A stretch of DNA of 64,000 nt, from IMG/VR virus record IMGVR_UViG_3300020186_000013, positions 144,146 to 208,145 of that record. One strand, written 5' to 3'. The position numbers and the translations under genes were made by a program. Below the pieces are notes generated by a model, which was given only the letters and a program-made list of their open reading frames with translations, did not search any database and had not been told where the DNA came from. Positions 1,646-54,293 of the stretch are shown piece by piece (positions within the stretch are counted from its first letter, which is position 1; every line of letters begins with the position of its first letter).

Positions 1646-2743
1646 TTACGCGACCGGCTGTTGGTCCGCCGACGAGTGGGCGATCGGCTCCGGTGTGGCG
1701 AAGATCTCGGTCGGGGATTGGTTGAACTTGCGACGGTCGCGACGCTGGAGGGCCTTCTGCAAGACAGCCGAACGGCTTCGCTTCCGCATCTTGTCGTACA
1801 CGACGGCCCCAGTCAGCAGGCTCGACAGACCGGCGTACATGCCGTACCCGCCCATGGCCTGGCCGAGGACGTTAGAACTTCCCTGGCCGAGATAGTCGGA
1901 TAGAGCAGCCTGTTTCTCGACGAAAGCGTCATACAGCCGATCAAGGGCCTCGTCGAGGGCCTTCTTCTCGCCCCACTTGTGACCGCAAGAGTTGCACGCC
2001 CCGCTGTACGGGTCACCCTCCATGCTCGCACCGCATTTCGGGCAGTCCTCGCCCTTGAACGTGTGGTCGCCGGCAGACTTGGCCACGGCCTTGGGCTTGT
2101 CGTACTGCGATAGCAGAGCGTCGTGGAACTCCTGGCGGGCCGAATCGAGGGCCTGCTCGCGTTCCGTCTTGCGACGACTTTCCATCACCGCGTCGACGCC
2201 CTTCCAGCCGAGGCCCAGACCGCCAAGACCGCCGGCCAGCATCGACAGACCGTACCACGGGATGCCGCCCTTGGTCGTCGCGTCACCGCCGAGTAACCAC
2301 GGGACCGGGGTGGCCTCCTTGTCCATGGCTGCCTTCCTCTTCGGCACGTCCTCGTCTTCTTCCTCGGCCGGGATCGGCAGGGGCAGCATCGCCGACCCCG
2401 CCGTACTCCGTGCCCCGGCCATGTTCTGGCGAAGCATGTGGTGCAAGCCGACCGCCCCTCGGGCACCGGCCCCGACGCCGAGGCCGATCCCGAGGATCTT
2501 GCCGACGTCGCCCATCGCGGACTCCCGCAACGCCGTGTTCTTGGCCTCGCTTATGGCCTGGCTGATCACGAGCTGCTGGGGGGTCGGGGCCGAGCCAGTG
2601 AGCGAGTCCAAGGCCCCACGGCCCAGGTCGACGACGGGCTTGGCGGCGGCTCCGATGGCGTCGCCCACGGCCCCGAGGAAGCCCTCTTTTTGCATCTCCT
2701 CGCGGACCTTACTGAGCACCGACTGGCAGGTTAGGCTGTCCAT
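1646..2743 (-). CDS. Gly/Ala-rich K-x-A-motif protein with hydrophobic GxxxG helices and an inserted CxxC...CxxC Zn ribbon; putative virion internal protein
   Basis: 365-aa ORF; motifs MQKEG-FLGAVG, MDKEA, AKSAG, EKKA, EKQAA; glycine-zipper helices; CPKC...CNSC. Virion role is inference. Confidence 0.6.
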   Translation of the reverse strand: MDSLTCQSVLSKVREEMQKEGFLGAVGDAIGAAAKPVVDLGRGALDSLTGSAPTPQQLVISQAISEAKNTALRESAMGDVGKILGIGLGVGAGARGAVGLHHMLRQNMAGARSTAGSAMLPLPIPAEEEDEDVPKRKAAMDKEATPVPWLLGGDATTKGGIPWYGLSMLAGGLGGLGLGWKGVDAVMESRRKTEREQALDSARQEFHDALLSQYDKPKAVAKSAGDHTFKGEDCPKCGASMEGDPYSGACNSCGHKWGEKKALDEALDRLYDAFVEKQAALSDYLGQGSSNVLGQAMGGYGMYAGLSSLLTGAVVYDKMRKRSRSAVLQKALQRRDRRKFNQSPTEIFATPEPIAHSSADQQPVA

Positions 2744-3110
2744 TGACCAACTCCATTTGTCCGGCCGTCATGAACGGTGCCCGGTTACCGTCTTCCATGA
2801 AGTATTCGACCCACTCGACGTAGACCATTATCTGGGCGGCGTCGTACTGCCGCTTAATGTGGATGCACTGGAACCACCCGTTGGCGATCCCGTCGAGTAC
2901 CTCCAAATACTTCTTATTCTGGTCCGGGTCGGTCGTGTCGAAGTGACCGTTGTGAGGGTCGGCCACCTTGACGGTCTTGTCTTCCCACTCGTCTGAAGTA
3001 TACATCGGGGACGATTGGCCGCGAAACGGCATGCCGTCCTCGGTCGCCCGCCCCCAGTGCACCTTCTGGCCGTTGTGCTCCGTTCGGTTGCTGAACTTGA
3101 TCAGGCTCAT
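2709..3110 (-). CDS. Hypothetical protein (133 aa)
   Basis: ORF with coding-like codon usage in a continuous minus-strand run. Confidence 0.7.
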   Translation of the reverse strand: MSLIKFSNRTEHNGQKVHWGRATEDGMPFRGQSSPMYTSDEWEDKTVKVADPHNGHFDTTDPDQNKKYLEVLDGIANGWFQCIHIKRQYDAAQIMVYVEWVEYFMEDGNRAPFMTAGQMELVNGQPNLPVGAQ

Positions 3111-3119
3111 CTGACGTCC

Positions 3120-3512
3120 TTACAGGAACATCCGCCCGCCACGACTCTGCTTAGCCTGCTGCAACCGCCGAATCGCCTGCTGCCGGCGGACCTTGGCAGC
3201 TTCGGTACGGTAGGTGTCGATGACCTCGCGGTCCTTGATGTCGGCGACGTCCTTGTCGGTCACGTCCGTGGCCTTGGCCAAACCGGCCCCGGCGATGCCG
3301 CCCAGGATCGGCGGGGCGGCAAGGGCCAGAGGCACCCCGACGCTGCCGACGAGCTGCGTCAACGCCGTGGCGGCGTCACCGACGGCCCCGAACAACGCGA
3401 GCTTGTCCATCGCGGCCTTGACCGCCCCCGCCATTTGTTGGGCGGTCATCCCGTGCTCGACGCACCGGGCCACGAACCCGACCTTGAATGCTTCCCGTGC
3501 AGTCAGTGGCAT
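3120..3512 (-). CDS. Small K-x-A-motif protein with shared 'FVARC..HGMT.QQM..AV' leader and a glycine-rich hydrophobic helix
   Basis: AAGGAGG SD upstream; MPLTAREAFKVGFVARCVEHGMTAQQMAGAVKAAMDKLA-LFGAVG. Confidence 0.7.
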   Translation of the reverse strand: MPLTAREAFKVGFVARCVEHGMTAQQMAGAVKAAMDKLALFGAVGDAATALTQLVGSVGVPLALAAPPILGGIAGAGLAKATDVTDKDVADIKDREVIDTYRTEAAKVRRQQAIRRLQQAKQSRGGRMFL

Positions 3513-3560
3513 TTGGCCGTCCTCCTTGACAGCTAAGAAAAGGATCTCACCCCTGAATAG

Positions 3561-4735: not shown

Positions 4736-5875
4736 CTAGTGAAACAGTTTCGGCACAACTGACCCGATGAGGCCGAGAGCGGCGACACCCTTGCCGATTT
4801 GGCTGAAGGTGTAGGGCGTGCCGACCACCTGGTTTAGCACCGCTCCGACCCAAGCCCCAGTAAGGTAATCTTTCCCCGCGTTCATTGCTAGTTGACCTAG
4901 CTGCCCGCCCGTGACGTGTCCGGGACTGCTCCGCTCGTCAGGCAGTTGCTGGGCCGCGTACATGGCCCCCATCGTCGTCGCGGCGAGGTCCGGTGACGCC
5001 CCCGACTCCCACAGCGTCTGACCGAGGGCGTTGATGTTGACGTCGTACGGCGTGCGGTGCCGATGGTCGCCGCCGCCGAACATGTCCCCGAACGCCCGCT
5101 TTACAAACGAGTCGCAAGCACCCTTGTAAGCATCGCCCACCTGTGGGGCGAGCAGGTGCTTGTTCGAGAACTCTTGGCTGTACTCTTCGGTCTGTGGGCG
5201 GCTGGTGCCGGCGAGTCGGCTTTCCAGGAGACTCGGCCGATCGAACTTAGGCGAGTCCGACAGCTGCTCGATCGGTGGGGTATCCAGCGGGTGCGGGTCG
5301 AGGAGGGAGTGGCCGGTCGCATGATTGGCGTACGCCCAGGCAGCACCGGGAGCCGCACCCGCCAGAGCACCGAGAATGGCTCCCGTCCGCTTCAATTTCT
5401 TGCCGTACTTGTGCGGCATTAACGCTTCAGCCAGAGAGCCAACACCATAACCAAGACCACCGCCCACCAATCCGGTCGTAAGCATCGCAGCCAAAGGACT
5501 CGGGGCGTTAGGGATTCCACCGGGGTAGGTTCCTGGGAAGAAGTTGAGGAGTTCACCGGCCCGCCGCAGCGTCTCGCTGTAGGCGACCTTGACCCAATCG
5601 CCACCCGTGGCCTCATCCCGAGTCAGGTAAGTCTCCCGCACGTGATCGGCACCGACCGCCCGCTCGGCGGCACGCTTACACCGCAGGGCATCAGGCCGAT
5701 GGAAGTCGATAGACGTACGCGGGAACAGGGCGACCTGATCGCGGTCCGGGCTATAGAAGTAATCGACGGGGTACTTGGTGAAGATCGACGCTGCCGCCTG
5801 CTTCACGTCCCAGCACGGTGCCGCCGTCTTCACGACCCAGGCATCCAGGCGGGGGATCACGTCTTCCCAATCCAT
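4736..5875 (-). CDS. Gly-zipper K-x-A-motif protein (putative virion internal protein)
   Basis: 379 aa; VKTAA, VKQAAA, VKRA-FGDMFGGG; TGLVGGGLGYGVG and GAILGALAGAAPGAAW helices. Confidence 0.65.
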   Translation of the reverse strand: MDWEDVIPRLDAWVVKTAAPCWDVKQAAASIFTKYPVDYFYSPDRDQVALFPRTSIDFHRPDALRCKRAAERAVGADHVRETYLTRDEATGGDWVKVAYSETLRRAGELLNFFPGTYPGGIPNAPSPLAAMLTTGLVGGGLGYGVGSLAEALMPHKYGKKLKRTGAILGALAGAAPGAAWAYANHATGHSLLDPHPLDTPPIEQLSDSPKFDRPSLLESRLAGTSRPQTEEYSQEFSNKHLLAPQVGDAYKGACDSFVKRAFGDMFGGGDHRHRTPYDVNINALGQTLWESGASPDLAATTMGAMYAAQQLPDERSSPGHVTGGQLGQLAMNAGKDYLTGAWVGAVLNQVVGTPYTFSQIGKGVAALGLIGSVVPKLFH

Positions 5876-16761: not shown

Positions 16762-16770
16762 GTCCACTCC

Positions 16771-17355: not shown

Positions 17356-17357
17356 TA

Positions 17358-18811: not shown

Positions 18812-18889
18812 GGCACTTAACATCCTTCAAATCTCCGTGAAGGTAGTGGACTCGCCCTGGCATACTAGCCGTGGCAGTTGATACAAAAC

Positions 18890-29743: not shown

Positions 29744-29752
29744 GATGATCTC

Positions 29753-30157: not shown

Positions 30158-30208
30158 GTTGTTCCTCCAGGGGTGACAGGTGGGCAGAGAAAAGGATACT
30201 CAACCCGG

Positions 30209-39991: not shown

Positions 39992-41269
39992 TTAGCCGAT
40001 CACAACAACGCGGTACTGGTTGGTCGTCGGTGCCACGGCGAACGTGACGTCGACGTTGTTGGCGTCCGTCACGACCCAGTCGGTGATCACGCCCGCACCG
40101 CCCGACACCGTGAACACCTGCACGATCACGTCCGTGGTGCCCAGTGCGTGGTTGACGGTGATCGTCGTGAGTGAGCCGTTGCCCACGCTGGCGGCGAACT
40201 TACCCGTGGCACCGAGGTTCGTGCGGGCACCGGCAGCCGTACCCGAGCCCGTGCCACCCCGAGTAACAGCGAGGTTGGCCTCACTCGACAGCGTGCCCGA
40301 GCCGTTGTTGATGACGACGTGGTCGGCCGTACCGTTGGCGATCTTGGTCCGAGCGATGGCTGCGGCCGTGGCGACCTCGGCGTTGGTCACGCCGAGGGCC
40401 TTGATGGAGAACGTGTTGCCCGTCAGCGTCAGCGAGACCTCGTCCGCGACGTAGGACGTGCCGGACGAGAACGTGATGAAGGTCAGCCCGTCCGTGCCCA
40501 CCACCGCCGAGCCGGTGTCGTTGGTGCAGACGAACGCCTTGTCGGCGTTGACCGTGCCCTTCTGGACCCAGAACGCGACCGACGCGGCGTCCGAGCCCGT
40601 GGGGAGGTCCGTCGCACGGGTCCAGGCACCCGCAGCGGCGACGTAGACGCCATCCTGCGACCCGGTCGACTGGCCGGTCGCCGCAACCCGCTCACCCGCC
40701 GAGACCGTGTAGCCGTCGATCGTGAGCAGGCCCGTGAGGGCGATGTTGGTCGTGGCGATGACGACGACGGGCTGGAGCCACTTGGTGCCGTTGATCAGGT
40801 TGTCGACATAGCTCTTGGTGACCGCGTCCGTGGCGTTGGTCACCGTGCCCGAGAGCGTCACACCCGACGAGCTGCCCGAGCCCGCGAAGGTGCCAATGCC
40901 CGCCGCGAAGTTGCCCGAACCGTCCCGGAGCACGATCGTCGAGGCCGTGTTCAAGGCGGTGGCGGCTGCGAGCTTGGTGAAGTCCGAGGACGACATGTAG
41001 CCGTTCTGGGAACCACTCGAAGCCTGCACCGTCAGGATCGGGGCGAGTGACGTGCCCGAGTTGGTGATCGGGGCCGTGACCGAGGTGCCCGTCGCCCAGA
41101 TGTCGTCGAGGCGGACCCAGCGGGAGCTGTTCCACAGGCGGAAGTAGCCGAGCACTGTGTCGTAGTAGATCTGGCCGACCACCGGCGAGCCGGGGGCCGA
41201 GGCCAGGTTCTGGACGCGAGCGTTTTGCAGCTCGTTCTGGTTCAGGTTGATGTTGTTGAGGAACAGCAT
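39992..41269 (-). CDS. Tail-fibre-like structural protein
   Basis: FLNNINLNQNELQNARVQNLASAPGSPVVGQIYYDT; DAVTKSYVD; ATTNIALTGLLTIDG; GVYVAAAGAWTRATD; ARTNLG. Confidence 0.7.
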   Translation of the reverse strand: MLFLNNINLNQNELQNARVQNLASAPGSPVVGQIYYDTVLGYFRLWNSSRWVRLDDIWATGTSVTAPITNSGTSLAPILTVQASSGSQNGYMSSSDFTKLAAATALNTASTIVLRDGSGNFAAGIGTFAGSGSSSGVTLSGTVTNATDAVTKSYVDNLINGTKWLQPVVVIATTNIALTGLLTIDGYTVSAGERVAATGQSTGSQDGVYVAAAGAWTRATDLPTGSDAASVAFWVQKGTVNADKAFVCTNDTGSAVVGTDGLTFITFSSGTSYVADEVSLTLTGNTFSIKALGVTNAEVATAAAIARTKIANGTADHVVINNGSGTLSSEANLAVTRGGTGSGTAAGARTNLGATGKFAASVGNGSLTTITVNHALGTTDVIVQVFTVSGGAGVITDWVVTDANNVDVTFAVAPTTNQYRVVVIG

Positions 41270-41296
41270 GCGAAAAGCCTCCGTGCTTTCGAGAAG

Positions 41297-41644
41297 TTAG
41301 TTGATGTAAGCCTTACCACCGAACGCCGCCGAGAACGTCACCGTGAGCTGGGCGTTGCTCACGTACCGCACCTCCCCGAAGACGAGCGTCCCGGCACTGT
41401 CGACGACGGAGACGGATGGGAATCTACCCAAATTGTGGTTCACGGTCCATACCGCCGCCGGGACGGCCTGCGTGTGGATGTACGAGACGTTGCCCCCGCC
41501 GCCACTCGCAACCAACGCGATCAGGTTGGCCAGGTTGAGCTGCGACGCATCGCCGTCGCCGGGCCTGTCCGTAGCGATGGAGACCTGCGTCGTATCGACG
41601 GTGTTGACATCGGGTAGGTCGCGGATTCGCGTCGCCTTGGCCAT
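41297..41644 (-). CDS. Small tail-associated beta protein
   Basis: YIHTQAVPAAVWTVNHNLGRFPSVSVVDSAG...LTVTFSAAFGGKAYIN; the same motif type ends the 39992 protein. Confidence 0.65.
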   Translation of the reverse strand: MAKATRIRDLPDVNTVDTTQVSIATDRPGDGDASQLNLANLIALVASGGGGNVSYIHTQAVPAAVWTVNHNLGRFPSVSVVDSAGTLVFGEVRYVSNAQLTVTFSAAFGGKAYIN

Positions 41645-41656: not shown

Positions 41657-44600
41657 TTAGGAGTGGCCCTCGCCCGTCAGACCCTGAGCGGCTTGACGGG
41701 CTTTGTTAGTCTGGTGATGGAGTTCATCGCGTGCGGGTGCTTGACCGCCAGTGAGCTTGTTCCAAGCGTCGGAGATGGCTCCGGGGTTCTGCTGGATGCG
41801 GGGATAAGCCGCCAAGCCCGCACCACCCGCCATTATCAGCGGGTTACCAGTCAGCATCCCGAGCCCGCCGAGACCCATACCGCCCAACGCCATTCCCCGC
41901 TGCCCGCCCGTCATGTTCTCGGTGTCGTACCCCAGAGCTTTCAAGAACGGGTTACCGACGTTACCCACCCGCTGGCCGATCTGGTACCGGATCTCCTGGG
42001 TCGGGTCGAACTGGCCCTCCTCGTTGAGGAAGCCACGCTCGTGCATGTACTTGTCCGCGTCCCGTGCTATGTTCGCCTGCAACGTCGGGTAGTCCTGCTC
42101 GATGAAGGTCTTCTTCAGGTCGTTGATCTTGTTGTCGACGTCGCCGGCGACCTGGTCATGCAGAGAACCATAGGCCGTTCCGCCCAAAGCAGCAGCCCCC
42201 GTCCCGAGCGTCAACCCCTGCCCCGCCCGGAAGCCGAGCTTCCTGGCCCCGGACAAACCGGCGGCACCGCTCTGGTATGCACCTTTGCCCCACAGGAAGT
42301 GCCCGGCACGACTAAACGGGTCCATGACGCCCTGACCCATCCGCGTCATCGCGTTCGACGGAGCCTCCAGGGCGGTCGTGACACCCCGACTCAGCATGCT
42401 AGGTTCCACGGGCGTCGTCCCCGCCGCTCGTGCCGCTGCGTTCGTCCGAACCAAAGACGAGTTGCGTGCAGCAGCGACGTTGCCCCCCAGGCCAGTCATC
42501 AAACCGGCTCGACTCAGGCGACGGCTCCACTTCTCAGGGTCGTTCGGGTCACCGTTACCTGTCATGTCGCCGAGCTGGTCCATGCCGAACCCGATATTGG
42601 TCCCGGCAAACGACTGAGCCAACGGACGCCACAGCGTCTGACCCGTCGCCGAGTTGCGGAATCCTCGGTTGCCCATCAACGCACCGCCGGCAATGCCCAG
42701 CGGATTGATCCTCCAACTTCGCCAGCCGCCCTCGGGTTGGCCAGTGGCCGGGTCAATCCCCGGACTACCAAGGGTGAAACTACCCTCCCCGCCGCCCATC
42801 GCGTTGGCCGTCATGTTGCCTTGCAAGCCACCGAAGGTCATCTGCATGCCACTACCGGACATGTTCGCCCGCGTTCGACCGGCGGCAGTCGCCGCACGGG
42901 GGAGCGTGGCAGCCTCGGTGATGTTGAGACCCGAGTTGTCTTTACCGTGTGTTGCCGGACGCGGAGACACGATCTTCGGACCCATACCCGGCGTCGGAGC
43001 ACCCCGTGTGCCGGTCCGCATCAAGGGCTTGGTCGACGACGCACCAGGACGGACCAGTCCGCCCAGCCACTTCGCACCCGACACCAGGGTCTCCTTGCTG
43101 GGCCAGACGGCGTCCTTCTCGAACGCCTGCTTCTGCCCGAACATGCTGCCTAGGCCCTGGGCCATCTGCTGCCCGCCCATCATCGACCAACCCGACGGGG
43201 CGTACTGCGACGCCAGCTGCTGAGCCGACCCGGCAGCCTGCTCATTGGCCACCTCGGACGTTGCCTTCATCGACTTCGGACCGGTGATGGACATCGGCGG
43301 CGGGGCCAGCGACGCCGCCCCGGTATTCTTGTTGACGCTGACCTCACCCATCCCCTGCGGGTGTGTCGCCTGAGCCACCTGGGTCTTCTGACTCACCTGA
43401 TTCTTGCCCGTCGGCAGCGTACCGGGGGACGGAGCGGTCGGTGCGGTCTTGGGCTTCTCCTGCTTGCCGCCCACCATCTTGTCGAAGCTGTCGAGGAACG
43501 CGAGCTTCTTGAGGCCGGCAGCAAGCTCAGCGTGCACCTGAAGGCCGTAGTTGGTCCCGACCCGGTCCACGGCGGACTTGATCTGCGACAGACCGAGGCC
43601 CTTCTGACGACAGTGGTCAAAGAACGACTCGGCGAACGGCGTCATGTCCATGCCGCCTTTGTCGAACCCAGGTAGTCGCGGCCCGGTGTACGGGACCGGA
43701 GGAACAGGTTGTTGCTGCCCGAAGTTGGCAGGCAGACGCGACCCGGTGTACGGGACCGGAGGAACAGGTTGTTGCTGCCCGAAGTTGGCAGGCAGACGCG
43801 ACCCGGTATACGCCGGCACAACGTGCTGTGGCACCGGCTTAGCCTGGGGCATCGGCTGGGCCTGCGGTTGTGGCTGGGCCTGCGGTTGTGGCTGCTGGGC
43901 GGCGTTGGTGACCGGTGCCGCTAACTGCGGAGCAATGTTGCCGACGACGCCAGCCGTTTCAGATGGAGGGGCTTGCGTGGGATCGGCCAGAGCGTTCTGA
44001 ATTTGGCTAGAAAGTTGCCCGCCCAGGGTGAACTTGTTGACGTATCCGAGCCCACGGTATAAGGGGTACTTCTCTTCGTTCTGCTGAGCGTTGTACGCGG
44101 CATTGCCGATCGCGTACGGCAATTTGTTGCTCACATCATCAATGTTGGTCGGGTTCGACTTCGCCAGGGCCATCGCCCCACCAGCCCCCAAAAGTCCAGC
44201 ACCGGTAACACCCGCAGCCTGGGTCACTCCACCCATGGTCTTGTCGAAGCCCTTGAGACCATACCCGACAGCCTGTTGCCCTCGACCGAGAACGGCCCGC
44301 CCGCCACCCTGAGCCACGTTCGCGGCACCACGGGTAAGCATGCTGTTCTGGATCGGCTGAGTGAACGGCCGAGTCAGGGGCGTCGACAGGGTGTTCTTTA
44401 CGGTCTTGACGGCCTGCACAAGCGGGTGAGCCAAGCGGTTGGTGTCGAGAGCGTGGACGCCTCGGCTCAACATCGACACACCAGGGACGCCATCCATCAT
44501 GCCCGGCAACTGGTGGGTCTGGGCCAACTGCTCCTTGGTCGCCCCCGCCGCAACCCGAGACTGCATATCGGCCCGGTTCATGAGAGGCTTGACAGTCCGG

Positions 44601-46924
44601 GAGTCGAACAGCTTGGTGCCTTGGAGCTTGCCGCCCTGGCCGTAGCCGCCCATGGTCTTGGCAAACCCGGCTGCCCCGCGTCCCATTAAGCCGCCAACAC
44701 CACGAACAAGGGCACCAAAGTACGCTCGTTTCTCAAGGTCCTTCCGCTGACAGTGGTCGAAGAACGCTTTAGCGGCTGGAGTCATATCACTTCCCCCCTT
44801 GGCGAGTCCCGGCACTGTCGGCACGTGTGGTCGGATGAACCCAGGAACTTCCTGTCGGGCCGCGTCCTGTTGCTGTTGAAGCCGCTGCACCGCCCCTTGG
44901 CGAGCGTCGTCGATCGCCTTGTTGCCTGCTTGCTGCACGGAGTCGGCAGTCTCGTTGCCTACCTGTCGAGCGGAATTGGCCCACGCCTGCCCGCTCGTCG
45001 TGCGACCTAGCATTTGGTTGATGATCACCTGCTTGGCCACGGACTGCTTGGCCGCTTCTTGTTGCTGCCGAATACGCTGCATCGCTTCCTGCCGAGCAGT
45101 GTCGAGAGCCTCGCCACCCGCCTGCTGTGCGGACGAGGCCAGCGTCTGTACGCTCTTCTGAGCTATCCTCCCCTGTTCCTGGGCCATCAGCCGAGACGCC
45201 TCCTGGGCCGACATCCCTCCGCTCACCCTCTGAGCCCACGCCTTCGCAGCCGGGTGCGACATAGCCCCAGCAGCTTCCGGCGACTCGGCCACAGCCTTGA
45301 GGTTGAATTTCGGCTGAGCCGCAGCCAAACGAGGGTACAGGTTGGCTGCGGCGGTCATCTTGGCCGCGTCTTGCGGCGACTTCCAGGTCGACCAATTCAG
45401 CATGTCGGACACGGCGGGCACGTCGAGGGCACCCTGCACCCTGTTGCTTTTCATCGCAGCAGCCACCAGCGGCTCAGCCCTGGCGGCGTTGTTGTCCCCG
45501 ATCGCGTTGCCGAGGTGCGTGCGAACCGAGCGGTTCTGGAGCTCCTGCAACGCCTCGGGCGGGTAGTATTCGTGGCCGGTCCTCGTCGGCAGGCCGTGCT
45601 CATGGAACTGATTCTTCGAGAACGTCTGCGATCGGGCGATCGGGCTAACAGCCCGGAGCAGCCGCTGGCCCGTCGGGCTGTTGACGTTGGCCTCATAGTT
45701 CTGCTGGAGGGCTGGCAGCCGCTTGCGGACTTCCTCCTCCATGATCTGCTCGGTCGGGGCCGGCGTATAGTCGGCAAGGTTGCGGATCACCCCCTGCATG
45801 ATGTTGCCGCCCGCCGTGAAGTTGCCGATCCGCTTCATCACGTTGTTGACCGGGTTCTCGTTCGCCTGCACCATGCTGTTGTGGGCGGCGTTGCCGACGG
45901 TATACGGGAAGTTCCGCTTCCCCGCAGCCCGACCAACCTCGGCAATGTCGGACTTGTCCGTCAAGCTGTCCCATATCGCGGGGAGCGGATTGTCCCGTAA
46001 CTTGGCAATCTCGCCGTTCGGGTCCACCGTGTTGTACGGGTCAACGGCTCTCGTGAACCTCTGGAGGTTGTTAGCCGGGGCGTGCCACAAGGCATTCACC
46101 CCGCTGCCGAGGGCCACGCCCGCACCACCGAAGCCGACGATCTTGGTCGCAGCCCCGAGAGCCTTGTCGGCCCCCATGAGACCGTACCCGCCCGCCTGCT
46201 GTGCCCGACCCAGGATCGCCTTGCCTCCACCCTGGGCCACGTTCGTAGCACCACGGGCGAGCAGATTGTTCTGGATCGGGGTCGTGAGTGGGCGAGTTAA
46301 GGGCGTACCCAGCAGGTTCTTGGTCACGTTGGCCGCGTGCATGAACGGGTGCGTGAACCGGTTGCGGTCGAGGTAATTGAGAGCCTTGTTGGTCACCCCA
46401 ACACCAGGGATGCGGGACCAATTGCCTGGTAGCTCATGGGTCGCAGCGAGTTGCTCGCGAGTCTGCCCCGCCGCCAAGCGGGCGTTCATCCCCGGTCGAC
46501 GCAGGAACGGCTTCACCGTCGTCGAGTTGAACATGGTCTCGCCACGGAGGTTGCCCCCCTGACCAAAACCAGCGAGGTCCCGCACGTACGCCTTGCCGCC
46601 GTGGACCTGGGCGTCGCCCACGGCCTTCGCACCCGACCGGGCCACCTGGTTGACCTTGTCCGCCGCCTGGAAGGGTGCCTTCACCACGGCCTTGGTGCCC
46701 TGCCCGAACATCCGGGCCGCAGGACGGCCAATGCCGTTGAACAGGCCCACAGCACCACGGCCAAGGGCACCGAAGACGGCCTCCTTCTCCAGCCCCTCAT
46801 TCAGCTCGGCGTACACCTGCTCGCCGAAACGAAGGCCCACGCCGTCAACAGCCTCTTTGATCTGTTGCGGCGTGAGTCCCTTGTCACGGCAGCGGGCGAA
46901 GAATGCCTCGGCAAACGGCGTCAT
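41657..46924 (-). CDS. 1756-aa modular Gly/Ala/Gln-rich K-x-A polyprotein (putative virion internal/ejection protein)
   Basis: GAGG SD before ATG 46924; three MTP-leader modules; internal duplication of ~200 aa; many GxxxG helices. Confidence 0.75.
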   Translation of the reverse strand: MTPFAEAFFARCRDKGLTPQQIKEAVDGVGLRFGEQVYAELNEGLEKEAVFGALGRGAVGLFNGIGRPAARMFGQGTKAVVKAPFQAADKVNQVARSGAKAVGDAQVHGGKAYVRDLAGFGQGGNLRGETMFNSTTVKPFLRRPGMNARLAAGQTREQLAATHELPGNWSRIPGVGVTNKALNYLDRNRFTHPFMHAANVTKNLLGTPLTRPLTTPIQNNLLARGATNVAQGGGKAILGRAQQAGGYGLMGADKALGAATKIVGFGGAGVALGSGVNALWHAPANNLQRFTRAVDPYNTVDPNGEIAKLRDNPLPAIWDSLTDKSDIAEVGRAAGKRNFPYTVGNAAHNSMVQANENPVNNVMKRIGNFTAGGNIMQGVIRNLADYTPAPTEQIMEEEVRKRLPALQQNYEANVNSPTGQRLLRAVSPIARSQTFSKNQFHEHGLPTRTGHEYYPPEALQELQNRSVRTHLGNAIGDNNAARAEPLVAAAMKSNRVQGALDVPAVSDMLNWSTWKSPQDAAKMTAAANLYPRLAAAQPKFNLKAVAESPEAAGAMSHPAAKAWAQRVSGGMSAQEASRLMAQEQGRIAQKSVQTLASSAQQAGGEALDTARQEAMQRIRQQQEAAKQSVAKQVIINQMLGRTTSGQAWANSARQVGNETADSVQQAGNKAIDDARQGAVQRLQQQQDAARQEVPGFIRPHVPTVPGLAKGGSDMTPAAKAFFDHCQRKDLEKRAYFGALVRGVGGLMGRGAAGFAKTMGGYGQGGKLQGTKLFDSRTVKPLMNRADMQSRVAAGATKEQLAQTHQLPGMMDGVPGVSMLSRGVHALDTNRLAHPLVQAVKTVKNTLSTPLTRPFTQPIQNSMLTRGAANVAQGGGRAVLGRGQQAVGYGLKGFDKTMGGVTQAAGVTGAGLLGAGGAMALAKSNPTNIDDVSNKLPYAIGNAAYNAQQNEEKYPLYRGLGYVNKFTLGGQLSSQIQNALADPTQAPPSETAGVVGNIAPQLAAPVTNAAQQPQPQAQPQPQAQPMPQAKPVPQHVVPAYTGSRLPANFGQQQPVPPVPYTGSRLPANFGQQQPVPPVPYTGPRLPGFDKGGMDMTPFAESFFDHCRQKGLGLSQIKSAVDRVGTNYGLQVHAELAAGLKKLAFLDSFDKMVGGKQEKPKTAPTAPSPGTLPTGKNQVSQKTQVAQATHPQGMGEVSVNKNTGAASLAPPPMSITGPKSMKATSEVANEQAAGSAQQLASQYAPSGWSMMGGQQMAQGLGSMFGQKQAFEKDAVWPSKETLVSGAKWLGGLVRPGASSTKPLMRTGTRGAPTPGMGPKIVSPRPATHGKDNSGLNITEAATLPRAATAAGRTRANMSGSGMQMTFGGLQGNMTANAMGGGEGSFTLGSPGIDPATGQPEGGWRSWRINPLGIAGGALMGNRGFRNSATGQTLWRPLAQSFAGTNIGFGMDQLGDMTGNGDPNDPEKWSRRLSRAGLMTGLGGNVAAARNSSLVRTNAAARAAGTTPVEPSMLSRGVTTALEAPSNAMTRMGQGVMDPFSRAGHFLWGKGAYQSGAAGLSGARKLGFRAGQGLTLGTGAAALGGTAYGSLHDQVAGDVDNKINDLKKTFIEQDYPTLQANIARDADKYMHERGFLNEEGQFDPTQEIRYQIGQRVGNVGNPFLKALGYDTENMTGGQRGMALGGMGLGGLGMLTGNPLIMAGGAGLAAYPRIQQNPGAISDAWNKLTGGQAPARDELHHQTNKARQAAQGLTGEGHS
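43682..43812. repeat. In-frame 60-bp tandem repeat (two identical copies plus a partial) encoding YTGSRLPANFGQQQPVPPVP
   Basis: Lines 43681 and 43741 are identical after their first base. Confidence 0.95.
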
Positions 46925-46932
46925 GTCCGTCC

Positions 46933-49122
46933 TCACGCAAGTCGACTGAGTATCGCACCCTCGGCGATGAAGTTGGCGATGTCGAGGTCAACGGCGTCCT
47001 TCTCGGCCACGGGAGGGTCGTACGCGGCCTCGTCGGCACGGCGTCGCTTGGCGTCTATGGTCTTCTTGAACAGGCCCTCGTCGCCGCCGCAGGCGTACCA
47101 GTCGTCCATCCCCTCCTTGGAATGGAGGCCGTGCATCCCGCCCGCCATGATCCCGGCGGCACCCATGGTCGTGTCACGGTTGAGATCGTTGTTCACCACA
47201 GAGTCTGCGAGGTAGTCGTGCCTGTTGGCCCCCTTGGGAGACCGCCGCATGATCTCCTCCAGGTCCTCGTTGTTGGCCTTGCGGCTCAGGTACGCCAACG
47301 CACCCGTGATGCCCGCACCACCGAGACCGCCGATGGCTGCTCCCGTGCCGCCGCCAAGGTGAGCACCCAGGGCCGCACCGCCGAGACCGCCGAGGATGCC
47401 GGCACCAACGCCCTGCTTGGCCGGGGAGGCCATCATCTCGGGAATGGGCGTGGCATAGCTCTGGAAGATCTTGGGCAGCAGCCGGGACTTACCCTGGTCG
47501 ATCTGAGCCGTCTCGTCGGCGTCGAACTCCCGTGCGGACTTGTGCCGGCCCTTGAACGGGTTCGGCTCCTCCTTGGGCTTCTTCTTCAGGTAGTCGCCCA
47601 CTGAGGCCCACGCCTCCTGGCCCTGCATGTAGTGGTCGGGCTTGTGCTGGTACGACAGGTGCGTCCCCTCGCCCGTCGCCGTCACGGCCTTGCCCTTGTT
47701 GTCTTGGGCTGCGGACTTGAGCAGGAGCACGATCGCCCGGATGTCGAAGCTCCGCTTGTTAATCTCGTTGGCAGCGACGTCCTTGACGCCGGCCTGCTTG
47801 AGGATACCGGCCTCCTTGAGCAGCTGCCGGATCACGGTCACCCGGTCGGACGCCTGCTTCTTCTTGGCCAGGTGCTCTTCGACCTCACGGTCAGACTTCT
47901 CATCGGCCGACTCCATCTTGTCGCCAATGACAGGAGTCGCAGCGTGGTAACCCGCCACACCGCCGAGCCCGCCACCGGCAAGGCTGCCGAGGAACGTCGC
48001 AAGCGGCCCGCCACCCATGTGGTGCGACAGCAGGGCACCCGACGCTGAACCAAGACCAACACCGGCACCCGTGGAGATGCCACGGGCAGCACCGCGTGCG
48101 GCACCCATCGCCATCCGGCCCTTGGCGTGGCCGTAGCCTGCCCCGGCCACGCCACCGATACCGGCACCCTGCAATGCACCGCTGATGCCCGATCCCGCCG
48201 CGTAGCCGAGGGCCGCACCCAGGGGCATCTCGGCCTGCTTGTCTAGAATCTGGCTTTTAGATCCGCCGTCGGACGCCTCGGCCATCATGCCCATTCCCAT
48301 GCTGTCGTTCTTCAGGTCCTCCCGAGCGGCAGCCTGACCGACCGGACGACGGTTCTTCATGTTGAGCAGCCGCATCACGCCGTGGCGGATGTTCTGGCGG
48401 CGGTGCACCGGCGGCGGTGGCGGCGGGTCCTGCGGCGAGGTGCCAGGAACCGGCTGTCCGGGAGGCGGCTGGCCCGGTGCCACCGGCTGTCCGGGCATCG
48501 GGGGAGGCGGCATCGGTGGTTGGCCGGGGGGAGCACCCGGAGGGGGAGCCATGCCCGGAGGAGCACCCGGAGGGGGAGCCATGCCCGGAGGAGCACCCGG
48601 AGGGGGAGCCATGCCCGGAGGAGCACCAGGCGGCGGACCGGCCATCGGAGGACCAGCTGGAGGCGGTGCCAGGCCCGCAGCCTTTTTACTAAAAGCGGAT
48701 TTCTCGGCGAAAAGGGGTCGCCCGGTGTCGAGGGCCGTCCCAGGGTTCGTCGCCGTGGGTGGGTTAGGTCGGAGCGTGCGTACATTCCGGCTCTTGGCCT
48801 TGGAAGAACGCACCGGTCCCCCGTTGGGAACCGACTGAGCGGCCTTCATCTGACCCACAATCCGGGCCACCGCATCCCGAATGCCCTTTCCTGCCGCCCC
48901 GCTCGCCTGCTTCTGGGCCTGCTGGGCCGCAGCCTGAATGCCGCCGACCGTTGCGTTCGGTTGGGGGCGTGCGGCGATAGACTTGATGGGGTTGTTCTGG
49001 GCAGGCTTGCCCGCACCGGAGAGCATCTTGCTCAGGCCCATGCCCGGAAGACCGCCCATTCCCGACTGCTGCCCGCCGAGGACGATAGGACTCGGCTGAG
49101 CACCAAGAGCTTGCTTGTTCAC
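46933..49122 (-). CDS. 729-aa low-complexity K-x-A-motif protein with Pro-rich repeats and glycine zippers
   Basis: GGAGG SD before GTG; about a dozen K-x-A sites by eye (NKQA, QKQA, EKSA, KKAA, DKQA, KKQA, LKEA, LKQA, LKSA, HKSA, EKDA). Confidence 0.75.
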   Translation of the reverse strand: MNKQALGAQPSPIVLGGQQSGMGGLPGMGLSKMLSGAGKPAQNNPIKSIAARPQPNATVGGIQAAAQQAQKQASGAAGKGIRDAVARIVGQMKAAQSVPNGGPVRSSKAKSRNVRTLRPNPPTATNPGTALDTGRPLFAEKSAFSKKAAGLAPPPAGPPMAGPPPGAPPGMAPPPGAPPGMAPPPGAPPGMAPPPGAPPGQPPMPPPPMPGQPVAPGQPPPGQPVPGTSPQDPPPPPPVHRRQNIRHGVMRLLNMKNRRPVGQAAAREDLKNDSMGMGMMAEASDGGSKSQILDKQAEMPLGAALGYAAGSGISGALQGAGIGGVAGAGYGHAKGRMAMGAARGAARGISTGAGVGLGSASGALLSHHMGGGPLATFLGSLAGGGLGGVAGYHAATPVIGDKMESADEKSDREVEEHLAKKKQASDRVTVIRQLLKEAGILKQAGVKDVAANEINKRSFDIRAIVLLLKSAAQDNKGKAVTATGEGTHLSYQHKPDHYMQGQEAWASVGDYLKKKPKEEPNPFKGRHKSAREFDADETAQIDQGKSRLLPKIFQSYATPIPEMMASPAKQGVGAGILGGLGGAALGAHLGGGTGAAIGGLGGAGITGALAYLSRKANNEDLEEIMRRSPKGANRHDYLADSVVNNDLNRDTTMGAAGIMAGGMHGLHSKEGMDDWYACGGDEGLFKKTIDAKRRRADEAAYDPPVAEKDAVDLDIANFIAEGAILSRLA
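48531..48630. repeat. In-frame 30-bp tandem repeat x3 (GAPPGMAPPP)
   Basis: agggggagccatgcccggaggagcacccgg repeated. Confidence 0.95.
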
Positions 49123-52355: not shown

Positions 52356-52433
52356 ACGAGTCTCCAGAAACGAACAAGCGGAGGGGGTATATTACCCACT
52401 CCGCTCGAAATCAGGCAGTCCACGCAAGTGGTA

Positions 52434-54293
52434 TTACTTGCGGCCGAGCTGACTGCCGCCGAGCCCGCCCATCGCCGCACCACCCGCCCCCAACAAACCC
52501 GGCAGGTAGCCCACGAGCTTACGCAGGAAGCCGGCCCTGCCGCCACCACCACCGCCAAGGTTCAAGGCGGCACGCGGCCCGCCATGCACGCCAGACCCGC
52601 CTCCCATCTTACCGGCAGGGAACGGTTGATTCTTGGTCAACAAGCCTGCCCGCCGGGCCGTCGGGTTGGGCATCGGCTTGGGCGGTGCCATCATGGTCTT
52701 TCCGAGACCATAACCGGCACCGCCGGCAGCGATACTGCCAATCATCGCACCCGGTGCATTCATGTCGTCGCCCATCTTCTGGAACATGTGGCCCGCATCC
52801 TTCATCGGCCCCATCATGCTCGCCGAGCCCTTCGTGTCGCCGCAGTCCTCGTTGGCCCGCTTGTGGGCATAGTTCGTCGCGGCCTTGCACAGCTCGTGGG
52901 CCAGGATGCCCCGTGCCTCGCCGTGCAGGTGAGGGAAGGCGACCTTGATGGCCTTGGTCAGCTGGTTGCCCGACACGATCTCAGCCTGGAGGCGTCGAAC
53001 AGCCCCACGCTTCTCCAGTGGCATGAGACGCACCACCTCATTGAGGTAGCCGTCCATGCAGTCCCGTGCGACCTTGACCTGGTACTTGGCCACCTTAGTG
53101 AGGATGACCCGCTTGACGGCCCGCTGAAGTTGATTGTCCGAGGCTTGCTTCTTCTTCTTGCGACCCTTGACAGCCTTGTACGCACCGTACCCGAGTGCAC
53201 CGGCACCAAGGGCGGCAGCCAGGGGGCCGAGCAGCCCCATGCCGCGACCCGGAGCCGCCTTGGCGGCGGGCACACCCTCACCCGTTGGGGTGGACGTCAG
53301 GCCCTCGGCCGGCTTCGGCACAATACCGCTCTGGCTCTGGCCCGACAGCTTGGCAGTGATGTCGCCAAGCGATTTGGGCAGAAAGCCCGATGCTCCGCTC
53401 AACTCACGCGGAGGAGGGGCCAGTGCGGGCGAGTTGCCGAGGAACCCGTCCACGGGCTCGGGCTTCTGGGGGAGCATTCCGCTGAGCCGGGACAACGCCC
53501 CACGCTGCGGGCCGGCAAGACTCTCGGGCCGACTCGGAATCAGCCCGGTCAGTTCGTCACCGGCCGTCTTGCCCTCTCGCTTCTTGCGGGTCATGCGGTG
53601 GCCGAGGTACGCACCGCCGCCGATCAGACCCGTGGCGAGCAGGGCCTGCATGGCCGGAGACATCCCGCCCCCGCCGCCAGCGGCAGCAGCACCACCAGCG
53701 GCGGGATCACCGGCTGGGTTACCCGCATTGGGCGTGGCCGCATCGGCCGGGTCGGGCTTGGACACGGAGACGTCGGACGGCGGTCCGCCGAGATCCAGGC
53801 CGGCTCCAGGGGCAGGCGTGGCAGCTGGACCGCCCTTACCCTTGAAGGGGACACTCAAGATGCCCGCCCCAGCACCGCCGAGAATCCCTAACGAACCGAG
53901 CCCGACCCCGAGCTTGTTCCTGGCCAACCAGCTGGCCGGCACCGGAGGGGCAGCGAGCTTCACCAGCTCATTGAACGCCTGGGGGTCCGCGTAAGCATTC
54001 TTGCAGAACGCCGCCAAGGGCATCCGGCAGACGCCCGCCAGGTGCTGAATCTCGTCGCGATTGAGGCCGCTGTCGGCGGCGAGCTTGTTGACGTATGGTG
54101 CCTCGGCAGCCGCAGCGGCCAGGGCGGCGATCTTGCTCATCGAAACCTCCGTGTTTGAAGAAGCGGACTTCTCGTCGTTACCGACGCGATCGGGTAGGGC
54201 CTTGATGTTCGGGGTGTGGTCGGCCCACCGCTTGGCCGTTGCCGGCTTTTGCGAAAACATCCAGCGTTGCTGGGCCTTGGACTTGAAAGGCAC
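52434..54293 (-). CDS. 619-aa Gly/Ala/Pro-rich K-x-A-motif protein with an N-terminal PFKSKAQ module
   Basis: GGAGG SD before GTG 54293; EKSA, SKIA, NKLA, VKLA, GKTA, KKQA, CKAA, HKRA; five glycine-zipper helices. Confidence 0.75.
   Translation of the reverse strand: MPFKSKAQQRWMFSQKPATAKRWADHTPNIKALPDRVGNDEKSASSNTEVSMSKIAALAAAAAEAPYVNKLAADSGLNRDEIQHLAGVCRMPLAAFCKNAYADPQAFNELVKLAAPPVPASWLARNKLGVGLGSLGILGGAGAGILSVPFKGKGGPAATPAPGAGLDLGGPPSDVSVSKPDPADAATPNAGNPAGDPAAGGAAAAGGGGGMSPAMQALLATGLIGGGAYLGHRMTRKKREGKTAGDELTGLIPSRPESLAGPQRGALSRLSGMLPQKPEPVDGFLGNSPALAPPPRELSGASGFLPKSLGDITAKLSGQSQSGIVPKPAEGLTSTPTGEGVPAAKAAPGRGMGLLGPLAAALGAGALGYGAYKAVKGRKKKKQASDNQLQRAVKRVILTKVAKYQVKVARDCMDGYLNEVVRLMPLEKRGAVRRLQAEIVSGNQLTKAIKVAFPHLHGEARGILAHELCKAATNYAHKRANEDCGDTKGSASMMGPMKDAGHMFQKMGDDMNAPGAMIGSIAAGGAGYGLGKTMMAPPKPMPNPTARRAGLLTKNQPFPAGKMGGGSGVHGGPRAALNLGGGGGGRAGFLRKLVGYLPGLLGAGGAAMGGLGGSQLGRK

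What the first reader, a model, noticed from the sequence alone, without database searches (positions are those of the whole stretch)
1646..54293. Dispersed family of modular proteins delimited by a recurrent K-x-A motif: candidate protease-processed virion cargo/ejection system
Seen: at least six otherwise unrelated low-complexity genes (1646, 3120, 4736, 41657, 46933, 52434) carry K-x-A at apparent module boundaries: MDKEA, EKQAA, DKLA, VKTAA, VKQAAA, VKRA, LEKEA, LEKRA, LKKLA, EKDA, NKQA, EKSA, DKQA, NKLA, VKLA, GKTA. The hexamer KKQASD occurs in two different genes. The motif typically follows a basic patch and precedes a glycine-zipper helix or a new domain. Established: large phages such as T4 (gp21) and phiKZ (gp175) mature head proteins by cleaving after short repeated motifs, which there end in Glu. 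Inference: K-x-A is the cleavage and/or packaging signal of a head-maturation protease, defining polyproteins of internal head/ejection proteins. Caveat: K-x-A arises by chance in Ala-rich proteins and I only counted by eye.
Basis: partly seen in the sequence, partly recalled or inferred. Interest (0 to 1): 0.85.

Follow-up and report, generated by a model that had tools for sequence, protein, structure and literature searches.

The report
Probable head-protease cleavage motif K-x-A
The lysine-x-alanine motif seen in six odd proteins of this giant phage is real and conserved, and it also marks the capsid protein's leader and fills the scaffold-like genes beside a capsid-maturation protease homologue, so it is most likely that protease's cutting signal; I found no description of such a specificity.

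Summary
The window is the last 64 kb of a 208-kb jumbo-phage contig. All six genes and every quoted motif are present. K-x-A occurs 53 times against 31.5 expected, and KA, KxxA and AxK are not enriched. Only three of the six genes are enriched individually. The genes are not unrelated, because they share modules. The "basic patch / glycine zipper" context holds for only a minority of sites.

Several sites are invariant in 8-15 orthologues at 35-50% identity. The decisive evidence lies 12-23 kb outside the window in the same genome. There, a homologue of annotated capsid-maturation proteases, scaffold-like proteins and the major capsid protein form a head module. In that held-out module K-x-A-x-D occurs 27 times against 1.9 expected. 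The capsid protein carries exactly one copy, invariant in about 80 relatives, at the junction between its variable leader and its conserved body. Tail-like and metabolic genes show no excess.

Best reading: K-x-A(-x-D) is the recognition site of the head-maturation protease, and the six window proteins are its substrates inside the head. Cleavage itself is not shown. This would be a new specificity within a known kind of system.

The parts
1646..2743 (-). g1646: 365-aa protein with three glycine-zipper segments and a basic tail. Conserved K-x-A sites are K222 (2072-2080) and K277 (1907-1915). A window-specific zinc-ribbon insert is flanked by K-x-A sites.
   Evidence: K277 is exact in 6/8 orthologues, plus 2 with the relaxed pattern [KR]-x-[AGS]. 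K222 is exact in 4/8.
3120..3512 (-). g3120: 130-aa protein made of the N-terminal leader module (3396-3512), which ends in D-K-L-A (K37, 3396-3404), then a glycine-zipper hairpin and a basic tail.
   Evidence: K37-x-A39 is kept in 9/9 diverged orthologues. The AF2 model is poor (pLDDT 57.6) and places K37 inside a predicted helix.
4736..5875 (-). g4736: 379-aa protein with an 18-residue N-terminal leader ending in V-K-T-A (5822-5875). Conserved sites are K67 (5669-5677), K96 (5582-5590) and K259 (5093-5101).
   Evidence: K259 15/15, K96 15/16, K67 13/15, K16 8/15 orthologues. Whole-protein enrichment 6 against 2.0, p=0.009.
41657..46936 (-). g41657: 1759-aa fusion of three paralogous units (A = residues 5-716, B = 717-1095, C = 1096-1759). 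The real start is probably the ATG at 46924.
   Evidence: The relative L005 has a 1109-aa version without unit B. The core domain (residues ~120-430) recurs in SNF2-helicase/NUDIX multidomain proteins P0031 and P0032.
46778..46924 (-). Leader module A of g41657 (residues 5-53). It has an internal K-E-A-V-D site and ends in L-E-K-E-A.
44723..44800 (-). K-G-G-S-D boundary plus the short leader module B of g41657, which ends in L-E-K-R-A.
   Evidence: The same K-K-G-G-S-D string ends the RNA polymerase beta-prime C-terminal protein outside the window.
43499..43660 (-). K-G-G-M-D boundary plus leader module C of g41657. It has an internal K-S-A-V-D site and ends in L-K-K-L-A.
46933..49122 (-). g46933: 729-aa Gly/Ala/Pro-rich protein with 15 K-x-A sites against 6.9 expected. 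Its KKQASD (47845-47862) is the best match in the window to the head-module consensus.
52434..54368 (-). g52434: 644-aa protein (608-619 aa by other gene calls) with 16 K-x-A sites against 7.2 expected. It carries KKQASD at 53136-53153 and an N-terminal FKSKAQQRWMF motif (phrog_1375).
61061..63010 (-). Portal protein (context). It places g52434, g46933 and g41657 between the portal and the fibre genes.
   Evidence: feature score 0.92-0.93 and TM 0.5-0.57 to portal families; tblastn to the Arash 'portal protein', E 9e-53.
39992..41644 (-). Adaptor (g41297) plus fibre (g39992) cassette directly downstream of g41657 (context).
1..1627 (-). 5' part of the RNA polymerase beta-subunit gene, which runs off the window start (context). 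The g4736-g1646 cluster lies directly upstream of the phage RNA polymerase genes.

Best explanation
K-x-A, with optimum about [F/M/L]-[E/Q]-K-Q-A-S-D, is the recognition site of this phage's head-maturation (prohead) protease.

The candidate enzyme is a 502-aa protein encoded about 18 kb beyond the low-coordinate end of the window (contig 124,596-126,104). Its N-terminal 250 residues are homologous to annotated capsid-maturation proteases. Its C-terminal half is itself packed with the motif.

Proposed sequence of events in the prohead (all inferred):
1. The protease removes the ~30-residue leader of the major capsid protein.
2. It chops the scaffold-like proteins into small pieces.
3. It trims leaders or modules from internal head proteins.

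The six window proteins carry the same motif with the same flanking preferences, and several carry it at the end of a shared N-terminal leader. They are therefore read as substrates: proteins built into the head and matured there, and probably delivered to the cell with the DNA and the phage RNA polymerase.

Shown: motif enrichment, spacing specificity, positional conservation, location in the capsid protein, and homology of the protease candidate. Inferred: that the bond is cut, where it is cut (after the Ala, by analogy), virion residence of the six proteins, and their ejection.
For: (1) In the six proteins K-x-A is 53 against 31.5 expected and is spacing-specific. K-x-A-x-D is 13 against 1.7 and hydrophobic-x-K-x-A is 23 against 7.0, while the other 61 window proteins show no excess.

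(2) Conservation: K in K-x-A is kept in 68% of orthologue cells against 37% for other lysines (Fisher p = 5e-4). K-x-A is the 4th most conserved of 75 residue pairs, and KxxA is kept in only 11%. Single sites reach 15/15, 15/16, 13/15 and 9/9.

(3) Held-out head module of the same genome: K-x-A 58 against 24.4 (z 7.4) and K-x-A-x-D 27 against 1.9 (z 19). The excess is concentrated in the 544-, 502-, 493- and 148-aa proteins, and a further 143-aa protein just downstream of the capsid gene has 5 against 1.4.

(4) Across 65-79 IMG/VR relatives, K-x-A is 2.2-3.5 times the expected count in orthologues of those proteins and 0.8-1.0 times in the 344- and 174-aa neighbours.

(5) The 312-aa protein is the major capsid protein: tblastn gives 30% identity and E 2e-30 to Arash gp226, annotated 'major capsid protein', and the Foldseek hit list consists almost entirely of HK97-fold capsid proteins. 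It has exactly one K-x-A-x-D. K29 and A31 are invariant. Column identity is 0.55 before the site and 0.85 after it. The Arash capsid protein has K-E-A at the aligned position.

(6) Protease candidate: tblastn/BLASTP hits to phage G gp19 (E 1e-9 and 1e-15), which PMC12484599 calls a head maturation protease; to Gordonia phage genes annotated 'capsid maturation protease'; and to Arash gp222. Invariant residues include N75, N77, D79, H103, S164 and D226. In relatives, inteins sit after residues 73, 103 and 166, that is, at these motifs.

(7) A position weight matrix trained only on head-module sites scores the flanks of K-x-A sites in the six higher than those in the other window proteins (Mann-Whitney p = 1e-4). 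KKQASD is the top hit.

(8) Tail-like and other downstream proteins are at chance.

(9) Phages with a homologous protease show the same pattern. In Arash, gp220, gp223 and gp225 are enriched. In phage G, gp19 and gp21 are enriched. In Mycobacterium phage ScoobyDoobyDoo, gp89 and gp90 are enriched and its capsid protein has K-L-A at residues 46-48.

(10) Precedent for short X-x-X cleavage motifs and N-terminal targeting leaders in T4, phiKZ and SPN3US: PMC5694885 and PMC10052503.
Against: - No cleavage data exist for this phage or its relatives. The Arash supplement holds no peptide-level data.
- The protease candidate could not be tied to T4 gp21 or HK97 gp4 by hhalign or hmmsearch, nor to any Pfam or PDB sequence family. 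Its label therefore rests on other people's annotations and on motif order judged by eye.
- g41657, g1646 and g3120 are not individually enriched.
- Distant homologues P0030-P0038 show no count excess: 32 against 34.
- The phage G capsid protein has no K-x-A at all.
- In the poor AF2 model of g3120, K37 lies inside a helix rather than in a loop.
- The extended patterns were derived after seeing the data from the six proteins. The held-out module and the other 61 proteins do control for this.
- Paralogous modules make some sites non-independent.
- K-G-G at the g41657 module borders coincides with Shine-Dalgarno-like DNA, so those two may be relics of gene fusion.
Confidence: 0.6

Rival explanations
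1. K-x-A(-x-D) is an assembly or targeting motif that is not cut. For example, it could be a short contact motif by which scaffold, capsid leader and internal proteins bind one another or the shell interior (a packaging signal), or a recurring helix-capping element of scaffold-type helices.
For: The motif occurs in the capsid leader, in scaffold-like proteins and in putative cargo, which are exactly the set that must co-assemble. In the AF2 model of g3120 the site is inside a helix. No cleavage is shown.
Against: A pattern of two fixed residues with a free middle residue (x = Q, R, T, N, E, D, L, V at single conserved sites) is the form expected for a substrate lying as an extended strand in a protease. 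It matches the form of the T4, phiKZ and SPN3US sites. The motif also fills the C-terminal half of the protease homologue and follows directly after its catalytic domain in three lineages, as with the autocleavage described for phiKZ and SPN3US.
Confidence: 0.2
2. The motif is the head protease's site in the head module, but the six window proteins are not head proteins. They would be membrane proteins of the infected cell, and their K-x-A sites would persist through shared ancestry of short modules and helix-rich composition.
For: Enrichment in the six (1.7-fold) is much weaker than in the head module. Three of the six are not enriched on their own. They share modules. They have many glycine-zipper, membrane-like segments. 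None matches a known virion protein family beyond weak hits.
Against: Their sites are conserved far above other lysines. Their flanks match the head-module matrix. g52434, g46933 and g41657 lie between the portal and the fibre genes. g4736-g1646 lie next to RNA polymerase genes, whose homologues are the most abundant virion proteins by spectrum count in Arash (PMC10585845). The RNA polymerase beta-prime C-terminal protein carries the same kind of extension. Arash gp224, a glycine-zipper protein with K-x-A sites, was detected in virions.
Confidence: 0.14
3. Chance: K-x-A arises from Lys/Ala-rich composition and selective reading.
Against: Local-shuffle z of 4.4-4.6 with spacing specificity. Held-out z of 19 for K-x-A-x-D. 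Clade-wide persistence. Invariant columns.
Confidence: 0.03

Closest known systems
T4 gp21 prohead protease with its L/I-x-E sites and the capsid-targeting leaders of internal proteins
   Same: A three-residue site with a free middle position. Many sites in scaffold/core proteins. An N-terminal propeptide on the capsid protein. Short N-terminal leaders on internal proteins. Gene order protease-scaffold-capsid (PMC5694885; T4 record).
   Different: Here the last fixed residue is Ala and the first is Lys, rather than Glu and Leu/Ile. There is no detectable profile similarity of the enzyme to gp21. The enzyme carries a zinc ribbon and a 250-residue motif-rich tail.
phiKZ gp175, 201phi2-1 and SPN3US gp245 (MEROPS S80) processing of head and ejection proteins at S/A/G-x-E or A-x-E
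   Same: A jumbo phage with its own multisubunit RNA polymerase, many processed head and ejection proteins, paralogous families of internal proteins, and C-terminal autoprocessing of the protease.
   Different: A different motif. No sequence relationship was detected to phiKZ-like proteins in PHROGs. Processing here is predicted, not measured.
Phage G gp19, Arash gp222 and the actinophage (Myrna-like, Gordonia) 'capsid maturation protease' family
   Same: Direct sequence homology of the 250-residue N-terminal domain, including the N-x-N-G-D, H, V-S-M and F-[DE]-x-S motifs and the zinc ribbon. K-x-A is enriched in neighbouring genes.
   Different: I found no published cleavage specificity for this family. 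The phage G capsid protein lacks the motif. The labels are annotations, not assays.
Herpesvirus assemblin, which cuts (V/L/I)-x-A before Ser (from my own knowledge, not tested here)
   Same: Ala as the last fixed residue, a free middle residue, and scaffold plus protease self-processing in a capsid of the same lineage.
   Different: Lys rather than an aliphatic residue at the first fixed position. No homology test was done.
Large polyvalent proteins of phages (the class in which domains such as Pfam InPase occur; that link is from my own knowledge)
   Same: The core domain of g41657 recurs fused to an SNF2 helicase in P0031 and P0032, and also to NUDIX in P0031. An InPase-domain gene lies next to P0031.
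   Different: The window proteins carry no recognisable enzymatic domain. K-x-A is not enriched in those distant proteins.

Membership tests
Prohead-protease processing system of the T4/phiKZ kind | A short recurrent motif strongly enriched in scaffold/core proteins | tested here: met
   the 493-aa protein has 14 against 4.6, the 544-aa 15 against 6.0, the 148-aa 5 against 1.3. K-x-A-x-D is 27 against 1.9. The pattern holds clade-wide.
Prohead-protease processing system of the T4/phiKZ kind | The same motif at the end of an N-terminal propeptide of the major capsid protein | tested here: met
   One K-x-A-x-D at residues ~25-33 in 79 of 80 orthologues. K29 and A31 are invariant. The leader is less conserved than the body. 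That the leader is actually removed is not shown.
Prohead-protease processing system of the T4/phiKZ kind | A protease gene in the head module | tested here: met
   The 502-aa gene lies two genes upstream of... more precisely, upstream of the scaffold-like and capsid genes, and is homologous to annotated capsid maturation proteases. Catalytic activity is untested.
Prohead-protease processing system of the T4/phiKZ kind | Cleavage after the motif shown by N-terminal sequencing or mass spectrometry | not testable with these tools
   No peptide-level data in the Arash supplement.
Prohead-protease processing system of the T4/phiKZ kind | Motif ends in Glu | tested here: not met
   The fixed residues are Lys and Ala.
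T4 gp21 / HK97 gp4 protease families | Profile-level sequence similarity | tested here: not met
   hhalign probability below 1% against both. hmmsearch finds no hit. No Pfam peptidase family among 25 members. No PDB sequence hit.
T4 gp21 / HK97 gp4 protease families | [DN]-x-[DN]-G-D, N-H, V/M-S and D/E-x-S-x-V-x-x-P-A motifs in that order, with invariant His and Ser | tested here: inconclusive
   Judged by eye against gp21 and gp4 sequences fetched. The residues are invariant and are intein insertion points.
HK97-fold major capsid protein (the 312-aa protein outside the window) | Homology to an annotated or solved capsid protein | tested here: met
   Arash gp226, E 2e-30 (tblastn) and 8e-39 (BLASTP). 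The Foldseek top ~40 hits are nearly all capsid proteins, but the best E is only 2.8e-3 on a model with pLDDT 54.
Portal protein (g61061) | Similarity to portal families | tested here: met
Tape measure protein (considered for g41657) | Match to tape-measure families | tested here: not met
   No Pfam or PHROG tape-measure hit. The gene is followed by a fibre cassette. Its Gly/Pro/Gln-rich stretches, seen by eye, look unlike a long helix. Helicity and flanking tail chaperones were not tested.

The most novel reading that the evidence does not exclude
The motif defines the whole set of matured head-internal proteins of a large, mostly uncultured clade of 150-235-kb phages. That set would include glycine-zipper proteins encoded beside the RNA polymerase genes, and an RNA polymerase beta-prime fragment with the same kind of extension. 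After ejection these membrane-active proteins would anchor the injected polymerase and DNA at a membrane to form an early transcription site. The protease family shared with phage G, Arash and Myrna-like mycobacteriophages would have a Lys/Ala specificity that I found no description of.
Probability: 0.2. Interest if true: 0.85.

Novelty: new variant of a known kind. Interest (0 to 1): 0.68.

Why it matters
If K-x-A(-x-D) is the cleavage code, the head-internal and ejected proteins of a whole clade of jumbo phages can be predicted from sequence alone. That clade has at least 109 IMG/VR contigs, and its more distant cultured relatives include Arash. Almost none of their genes match known families.

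It would add a Lys/Ala specificity to the Glu-ending motifs known from T4 and phiKZ. It would also give a biochemical handle on a protease family that is so far named only by annotation.

The idea can be tested directly in cultured phages of Salmonella, Mycobacterium smegmatis and Bacillus.

Tried and rejected
- **Nucleotide and protein searches of GenBank phages with g41657:** no match.
- **g51327 as an anchor for finding relatives:** it has no homologues.
- **g46933 homologue search:** only close relatives and low-complexity hits.
- **The search for related loci with alignments A1 and A5:** A6 found only the source contig.
- **The fibre gene as an anchor:** it fetched 80 unrelated phages that share a promiscuous adaptor+fibre cassette.
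- **Pfam and PHROGs on nearly all window genes and on the head module:** no capsid or protease family.
- **g59497 as a protease candidate:** nothing.
- **The 868-aa downstream protein as a capsid candidate:** nothing.
- **AF2 of g3120:** too poor to place the site.
- **Counting K-x-A by eye in distant homologues:** it looked convincing but was at chance when counted properly.
- **A DNA-level motif:** rejected, since codon usage at the sites equals the background.
- **The amphipathic-helix explanation:** rejected, because no other lysine-hydrophobic pair at that spacing, and no other window protein, shows the effect.
- **Signal peptidase or rhomboid-type sites:** considered from memory and not pursued. 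Many sites are far from hydrophobic segments and the hydrophobic position does not fit.
- **Literature search:** no paper describing a K-x-A prohead cleavage motif was found.


Full report
**What the window is.** It is the last 64 kb of IMG/VR contig UViG_3300020186_000013, which is 208,145 bp long; window position x corresponds to contig position 144,145 + x. The GC content is 63% and all genes lie on the minus strand. Recognisable genes are:
- a portal (61061-63010);
- several glycosyltransferases and a tubulin-like protein;
- a fibre cassette (39992-41644);
- a ribonucleotide reductase and a NUDIX/kinase protein;
- at the low-coordinate end, the start of a multisubunit RNA polymerase beta gene.

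Most genes match nothing in Pfam or PHROGs. The nearest cultured phages are Salmonella phage Arash and Vibrio phages D69, D148 and D181, with 25-28% portal identity.

**The observation.** The six ORFs and all quoted strings are there. Pooled, K-x-A occurs 53 times against 31.5 expected. When residues are shuffled only within 15- or 30-residue windows, it remains the third most over-represented of about 970 residue pairs (z 4.4-4.6). KA, KxxA, AxK and RxA are flat. The other 61 proteins of the window are at chance. Codon usage at the sites is ordinary.

Position-specific counts sharpen the motif. A hydrophobic residue sits at -2 (22-23 against 7-11 expected), Glu at -1, Asp at +4 (13 against about 2), and Phe or Tyr at +3.

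Four points in the finding need correction:
- Only g4736, g46933 and g52434 are enriched on their own.
- The six are not unrelated. g41657 is three tandem paralogous units. Each begins with a D-M-T-P-F-A-E... leader module that ends in L-E/K-K-x-A, and g3120 starts with the same module. Hexamers are shared among g1646, g3120 and g41657, and between g46933 and g52434.
- The 'basic patch before, glycine zipper after' context applies to a minority of sites.
- Distant homologues that looked motif-rich by eye were at chance when counted.

**Conservation.** Orthologues of g1646, g3120 and g4736 were recovered from related 85-235-kb contigs, from shorter metagenome fragments and from the protein search. 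They are about 35-50% identical. Site by site:
- In g3120, K37-x-A39 is kept in 9 of 9.
- In g4736, K259 is kept in 15/15, K96 in 15/16, K67 in 13/15 and K16 in 8/15.
- In g1646, K277 is kept in 6/8, plus two with the relaxed pattern.

The middle residue varies freely. Lysines inside K-x-A are conserved in 68% of orthologue cells against 37% for other lysines. K-x-A is the fourth most conserved of 75 residue pairs, whereas KxxA is kept in only 11%. Some listed sites are not conserved: g1646 K137 and K260, and g4736 K25.

The relative L005 lacks unit B of g41657, and the deletion falls exactly at the K-K-G-G-S-D / M-T-P junction. The DNA before the internal ATGs looks like a ribosome-binding site, so g41657 is best seen as a fusion of tandem paralogues. 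However, the same K-K-G-G-S-D string ends an RNA polymerase subunit elsewhere in the genome. It is therefore also a protein-level element.

**The decisive evidence lies outside the window.** I walked downstream on the same genome. After the RNA polymerase genes there is a block that no library recognises. In order it encodes proteins of 544, 428, 502, 493, 148, 174 and 312 aa.

The motif had been defined on the window only, so this block is a held-out test:
- K-x-A is 58 against 24.4 expected (z 7.4).
- K-x-A-x-D is 27 against 1.9 (z 19).
- The control spacings are flat.
- The excess is confined to the 544-, 502-, 493- and 148-aa proteins.
- A further 143-aa protein just downstream of the capsid gene has 5 against 1.4.

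The 312-aa protein is 61-89% identical in 80 IMG/VR contigs (30-235 kb, most above 100 kb). It matches the Arash 'major capsid protein' at E 2e-30 and the phage G major head protein. Its fold-search hit list is made almost wholly of HK97-fold capsid proteins, though on a weak model.

This capsid protein carries exactly one K-x-A-x-D. K29 and A31 are invariant. The site lies where a poorly conserved leader (column identity 0.55) meets a highly conserved body (0.85). Arash has K-E-A at the aligned position despite only 30% overall identity.

Across 65-79 relatives the excess of K-x-A persists in orthologues of the 868-, 544-, 502-, 493- and 148-aa proteins (2.2-3.5-fold). It is absent from the 344- and 174-aa neighbours. 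Most genes downstream of the capsid gene, including a 940-aa and a 158-aa protein that may be tail parts, are at chance.

**The protease candidate.** The N-terminal 250 residues of the 502-aa protein are highly conserved. Invariant residues include N75, R76, N77, D79, H103, S164, four Cys residues that look like a zinc ribbon, D226, P233 and A234.

tblastn finds Arash gp222, the Vibrio phages, phage G gp19 (E 1e-9; BLASTP 1e-15) and over 200 actinophage genes. Some of the actinophage genes are annotated 'capsid maturation protease'. A recent study of phage G calls gp19 a head maturation protease (PMC12484599).

In relatives, inteins interrupt this gene after residues 73, 103 and 166. Those positions are next to the N-R-N-G-D, N-H and V-S-M motifs. 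From general knowledge, inteins typically sit at functional cores.

By eye, the order and spacing of these motifs resemble T4 gp21 and HK97 gp4, whose sequences I fetched. But hhalign, hmmsearch, Pfam and PDB sequence searches give nothing. Membership of those families is therefore not established.

The C-terminal half of the protein holds most of its 18 K-x-A sites. A K-x-A-S site follows the catalytic domain at aligned positions in this phage and in phage G, and a similar site occurs in the mycobacteriophage. This recalls the C-terminal autocleavage described for phiKZ gp175 and SPN3US gp245 (PMC5694885).

**Linking back to the six window genes.** A position weight matrix trained only on head-module sites has the consensus roughly F/M/L-E/Q-K-Q-A-S-D. 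With K and A themselves excluded from scoring, it scores the flanks of K-x-A sites in the six well above those in the other window proteins (Mann-Whitney p = 1e-4). Its best hit in the window is the KKQASD of g46933.

Several of the proteins carry the motif at the end of a conserved N-terminal leader:
- 18 residues in g4736;
- about 20 residues in g1646 orthologues;
- about 21 to 50 residues in g3120, in the g41657 units, and in a 250-aa protein downstream of the polymerase genes.

Genomic context also fits head-internal proteins. g52434, g46933 and g41657 lie between the portal and the fibre genes. g4736-g1646 abut the RNA polymerase genes. In Arash, the polymerase subunits are the most abundant virion proteins by spectrum count, and a glycine-zipper protein with K-x-A sites (gp224) is also in the particle (PMC10585845).

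**Mechanism proposed.** The head-maturation protease recognises K at the third position and A at the first position before the cut; this placement is by analogy and is not shown. It would remove the capsid leader, degrade the scaffold-like proteins and its own tail, and trim leaders or modules from internal proteins. Those internal proteins include the six window proteins, which would then be delivered with the DNA.

The rivals are a non-cleaved assembly or targeting motif, a non-virion role for the six, and chance. I weight them at 0.20, 0.14 and 0.03.

**Comparison with known systems, and novelty.** The architecture is that of T4 and phiKZ/SPN3US head maturation. The motif is different, ending in Ala with Lys two residues before it, where the known phage motifs end in Glu. 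The enzyme belongs to a family known only from annotation. I found no paper describing such a specificity. I therefore rate it a new variant of a known kind, directly testable in cultured relatives.

Noticed in passing
window 1-1627 and beyond (L009:14249-19514; L004:11635-17304): The RNA polymerase beta gene of the source phage ends in an intein-like N-fragment, and the beta-prime gene begins with an intein-like C-fragment. A 134-193-aa ORF lies between them. In the relative L004, beta and beta-prime form one 1889-aa ORF with Intein_splicing and LAGLIDADG hits. This may be a split or disrupted intein joining two polymerase subunits.
   Followed up: partly
L123, L132, L134, L184, L192 (orthologues of L118:5730-7238): Inteins of about 260-400 aa are inserted at three different points of the capsid-maturation protease homologue: after residues 73, 103 and 166 of the reference. 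Two sit in one gene in L123 and in L192.
   Followed up: partly
window 39992-41644: The last ~60 residues of g41297 and the first ~55 residues of the fibre g39992 form a cassette junction shared with at least 80 otherwise unrelated IMG/VR phage contigs. This looks like a widely exchanged adaptor-fibre joint.
   Followed up: partly
window 44786-44800 and 43646-43660: The codons for K-G-G before the internal Met of g41657 units B and C read as Shine-Dalgarno-like DNA 7 nt upstream of an ATG. Internal translation starts or recent gene fusion are both possible. The annotated GTG start at 46936 is probably wrong, and the ATG at 46924 with a GAGGA upstream is the likelier start.
   Followed up: partly
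window 56280-58061: A tubulin/FtsZ-like protein (471 aa by other gene calls) lies a few genes downstream of the portal and has no PHROG match to the phage tubulin PhuZ. The overlapping ORF start in the window is probably too long.
   Followed up: no
window 15874-20050, 28805-31189, 34991-35782, 57728-61064: An unusually large number of glycosyltransferase-like genes (at least seven) plus a UDP-glucose dehydrogenase. Three of them lie directly after the portal gene. They may serve virion or DNA glycosylation.
   Followed up: no
window 54240-54300 (g52434 N-terminus): An F-K-S-K-A-Q-Q-R-W-M-F motif matches phrog_1375, a family of unknown function. Gene callers disagree on the start of this gene (608, 619 or 644 aa).
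   Followed up: no
window 1958-2060 (g1646 residues ~228-262): A C-x-x-C ... C-x-x-C zinc-ribbon insert is present only in the window's copy of g1646. It is bracketed by two K-x-A sites and absent from all eight orthologues.
   Followed up: partly
P0031, P0032 (L007): The conserved core of g41657 (residues ~120-430) occurs inside 1444-1536-aa proteins behind an SNF2 helicase, and in P0031 ahead of a NUDIX domain. An InPase-domain gene lies next to P0031. These look like large multidomain proteins of the kind that phages deliver into cells.
   Followed up: partly
L116:12036-15872: An RNA polymerase beta-prime C-terminal fragment is fused to a ~700-residue low-complexity extension with a glycine-zipper segment. 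The extension ends in V-M-K-K-G-G-S-D-W-L-S-L-L-R.
   Followed up: no
window 63050-63220: A 56-aa ORF lies between a P/Q-rich 472-484-aa gene and the portal. It has four K-x-A sites, including D-E-K-K-A-A-D, the second-best match in the window to the head-module consensus.
   Followed up: no
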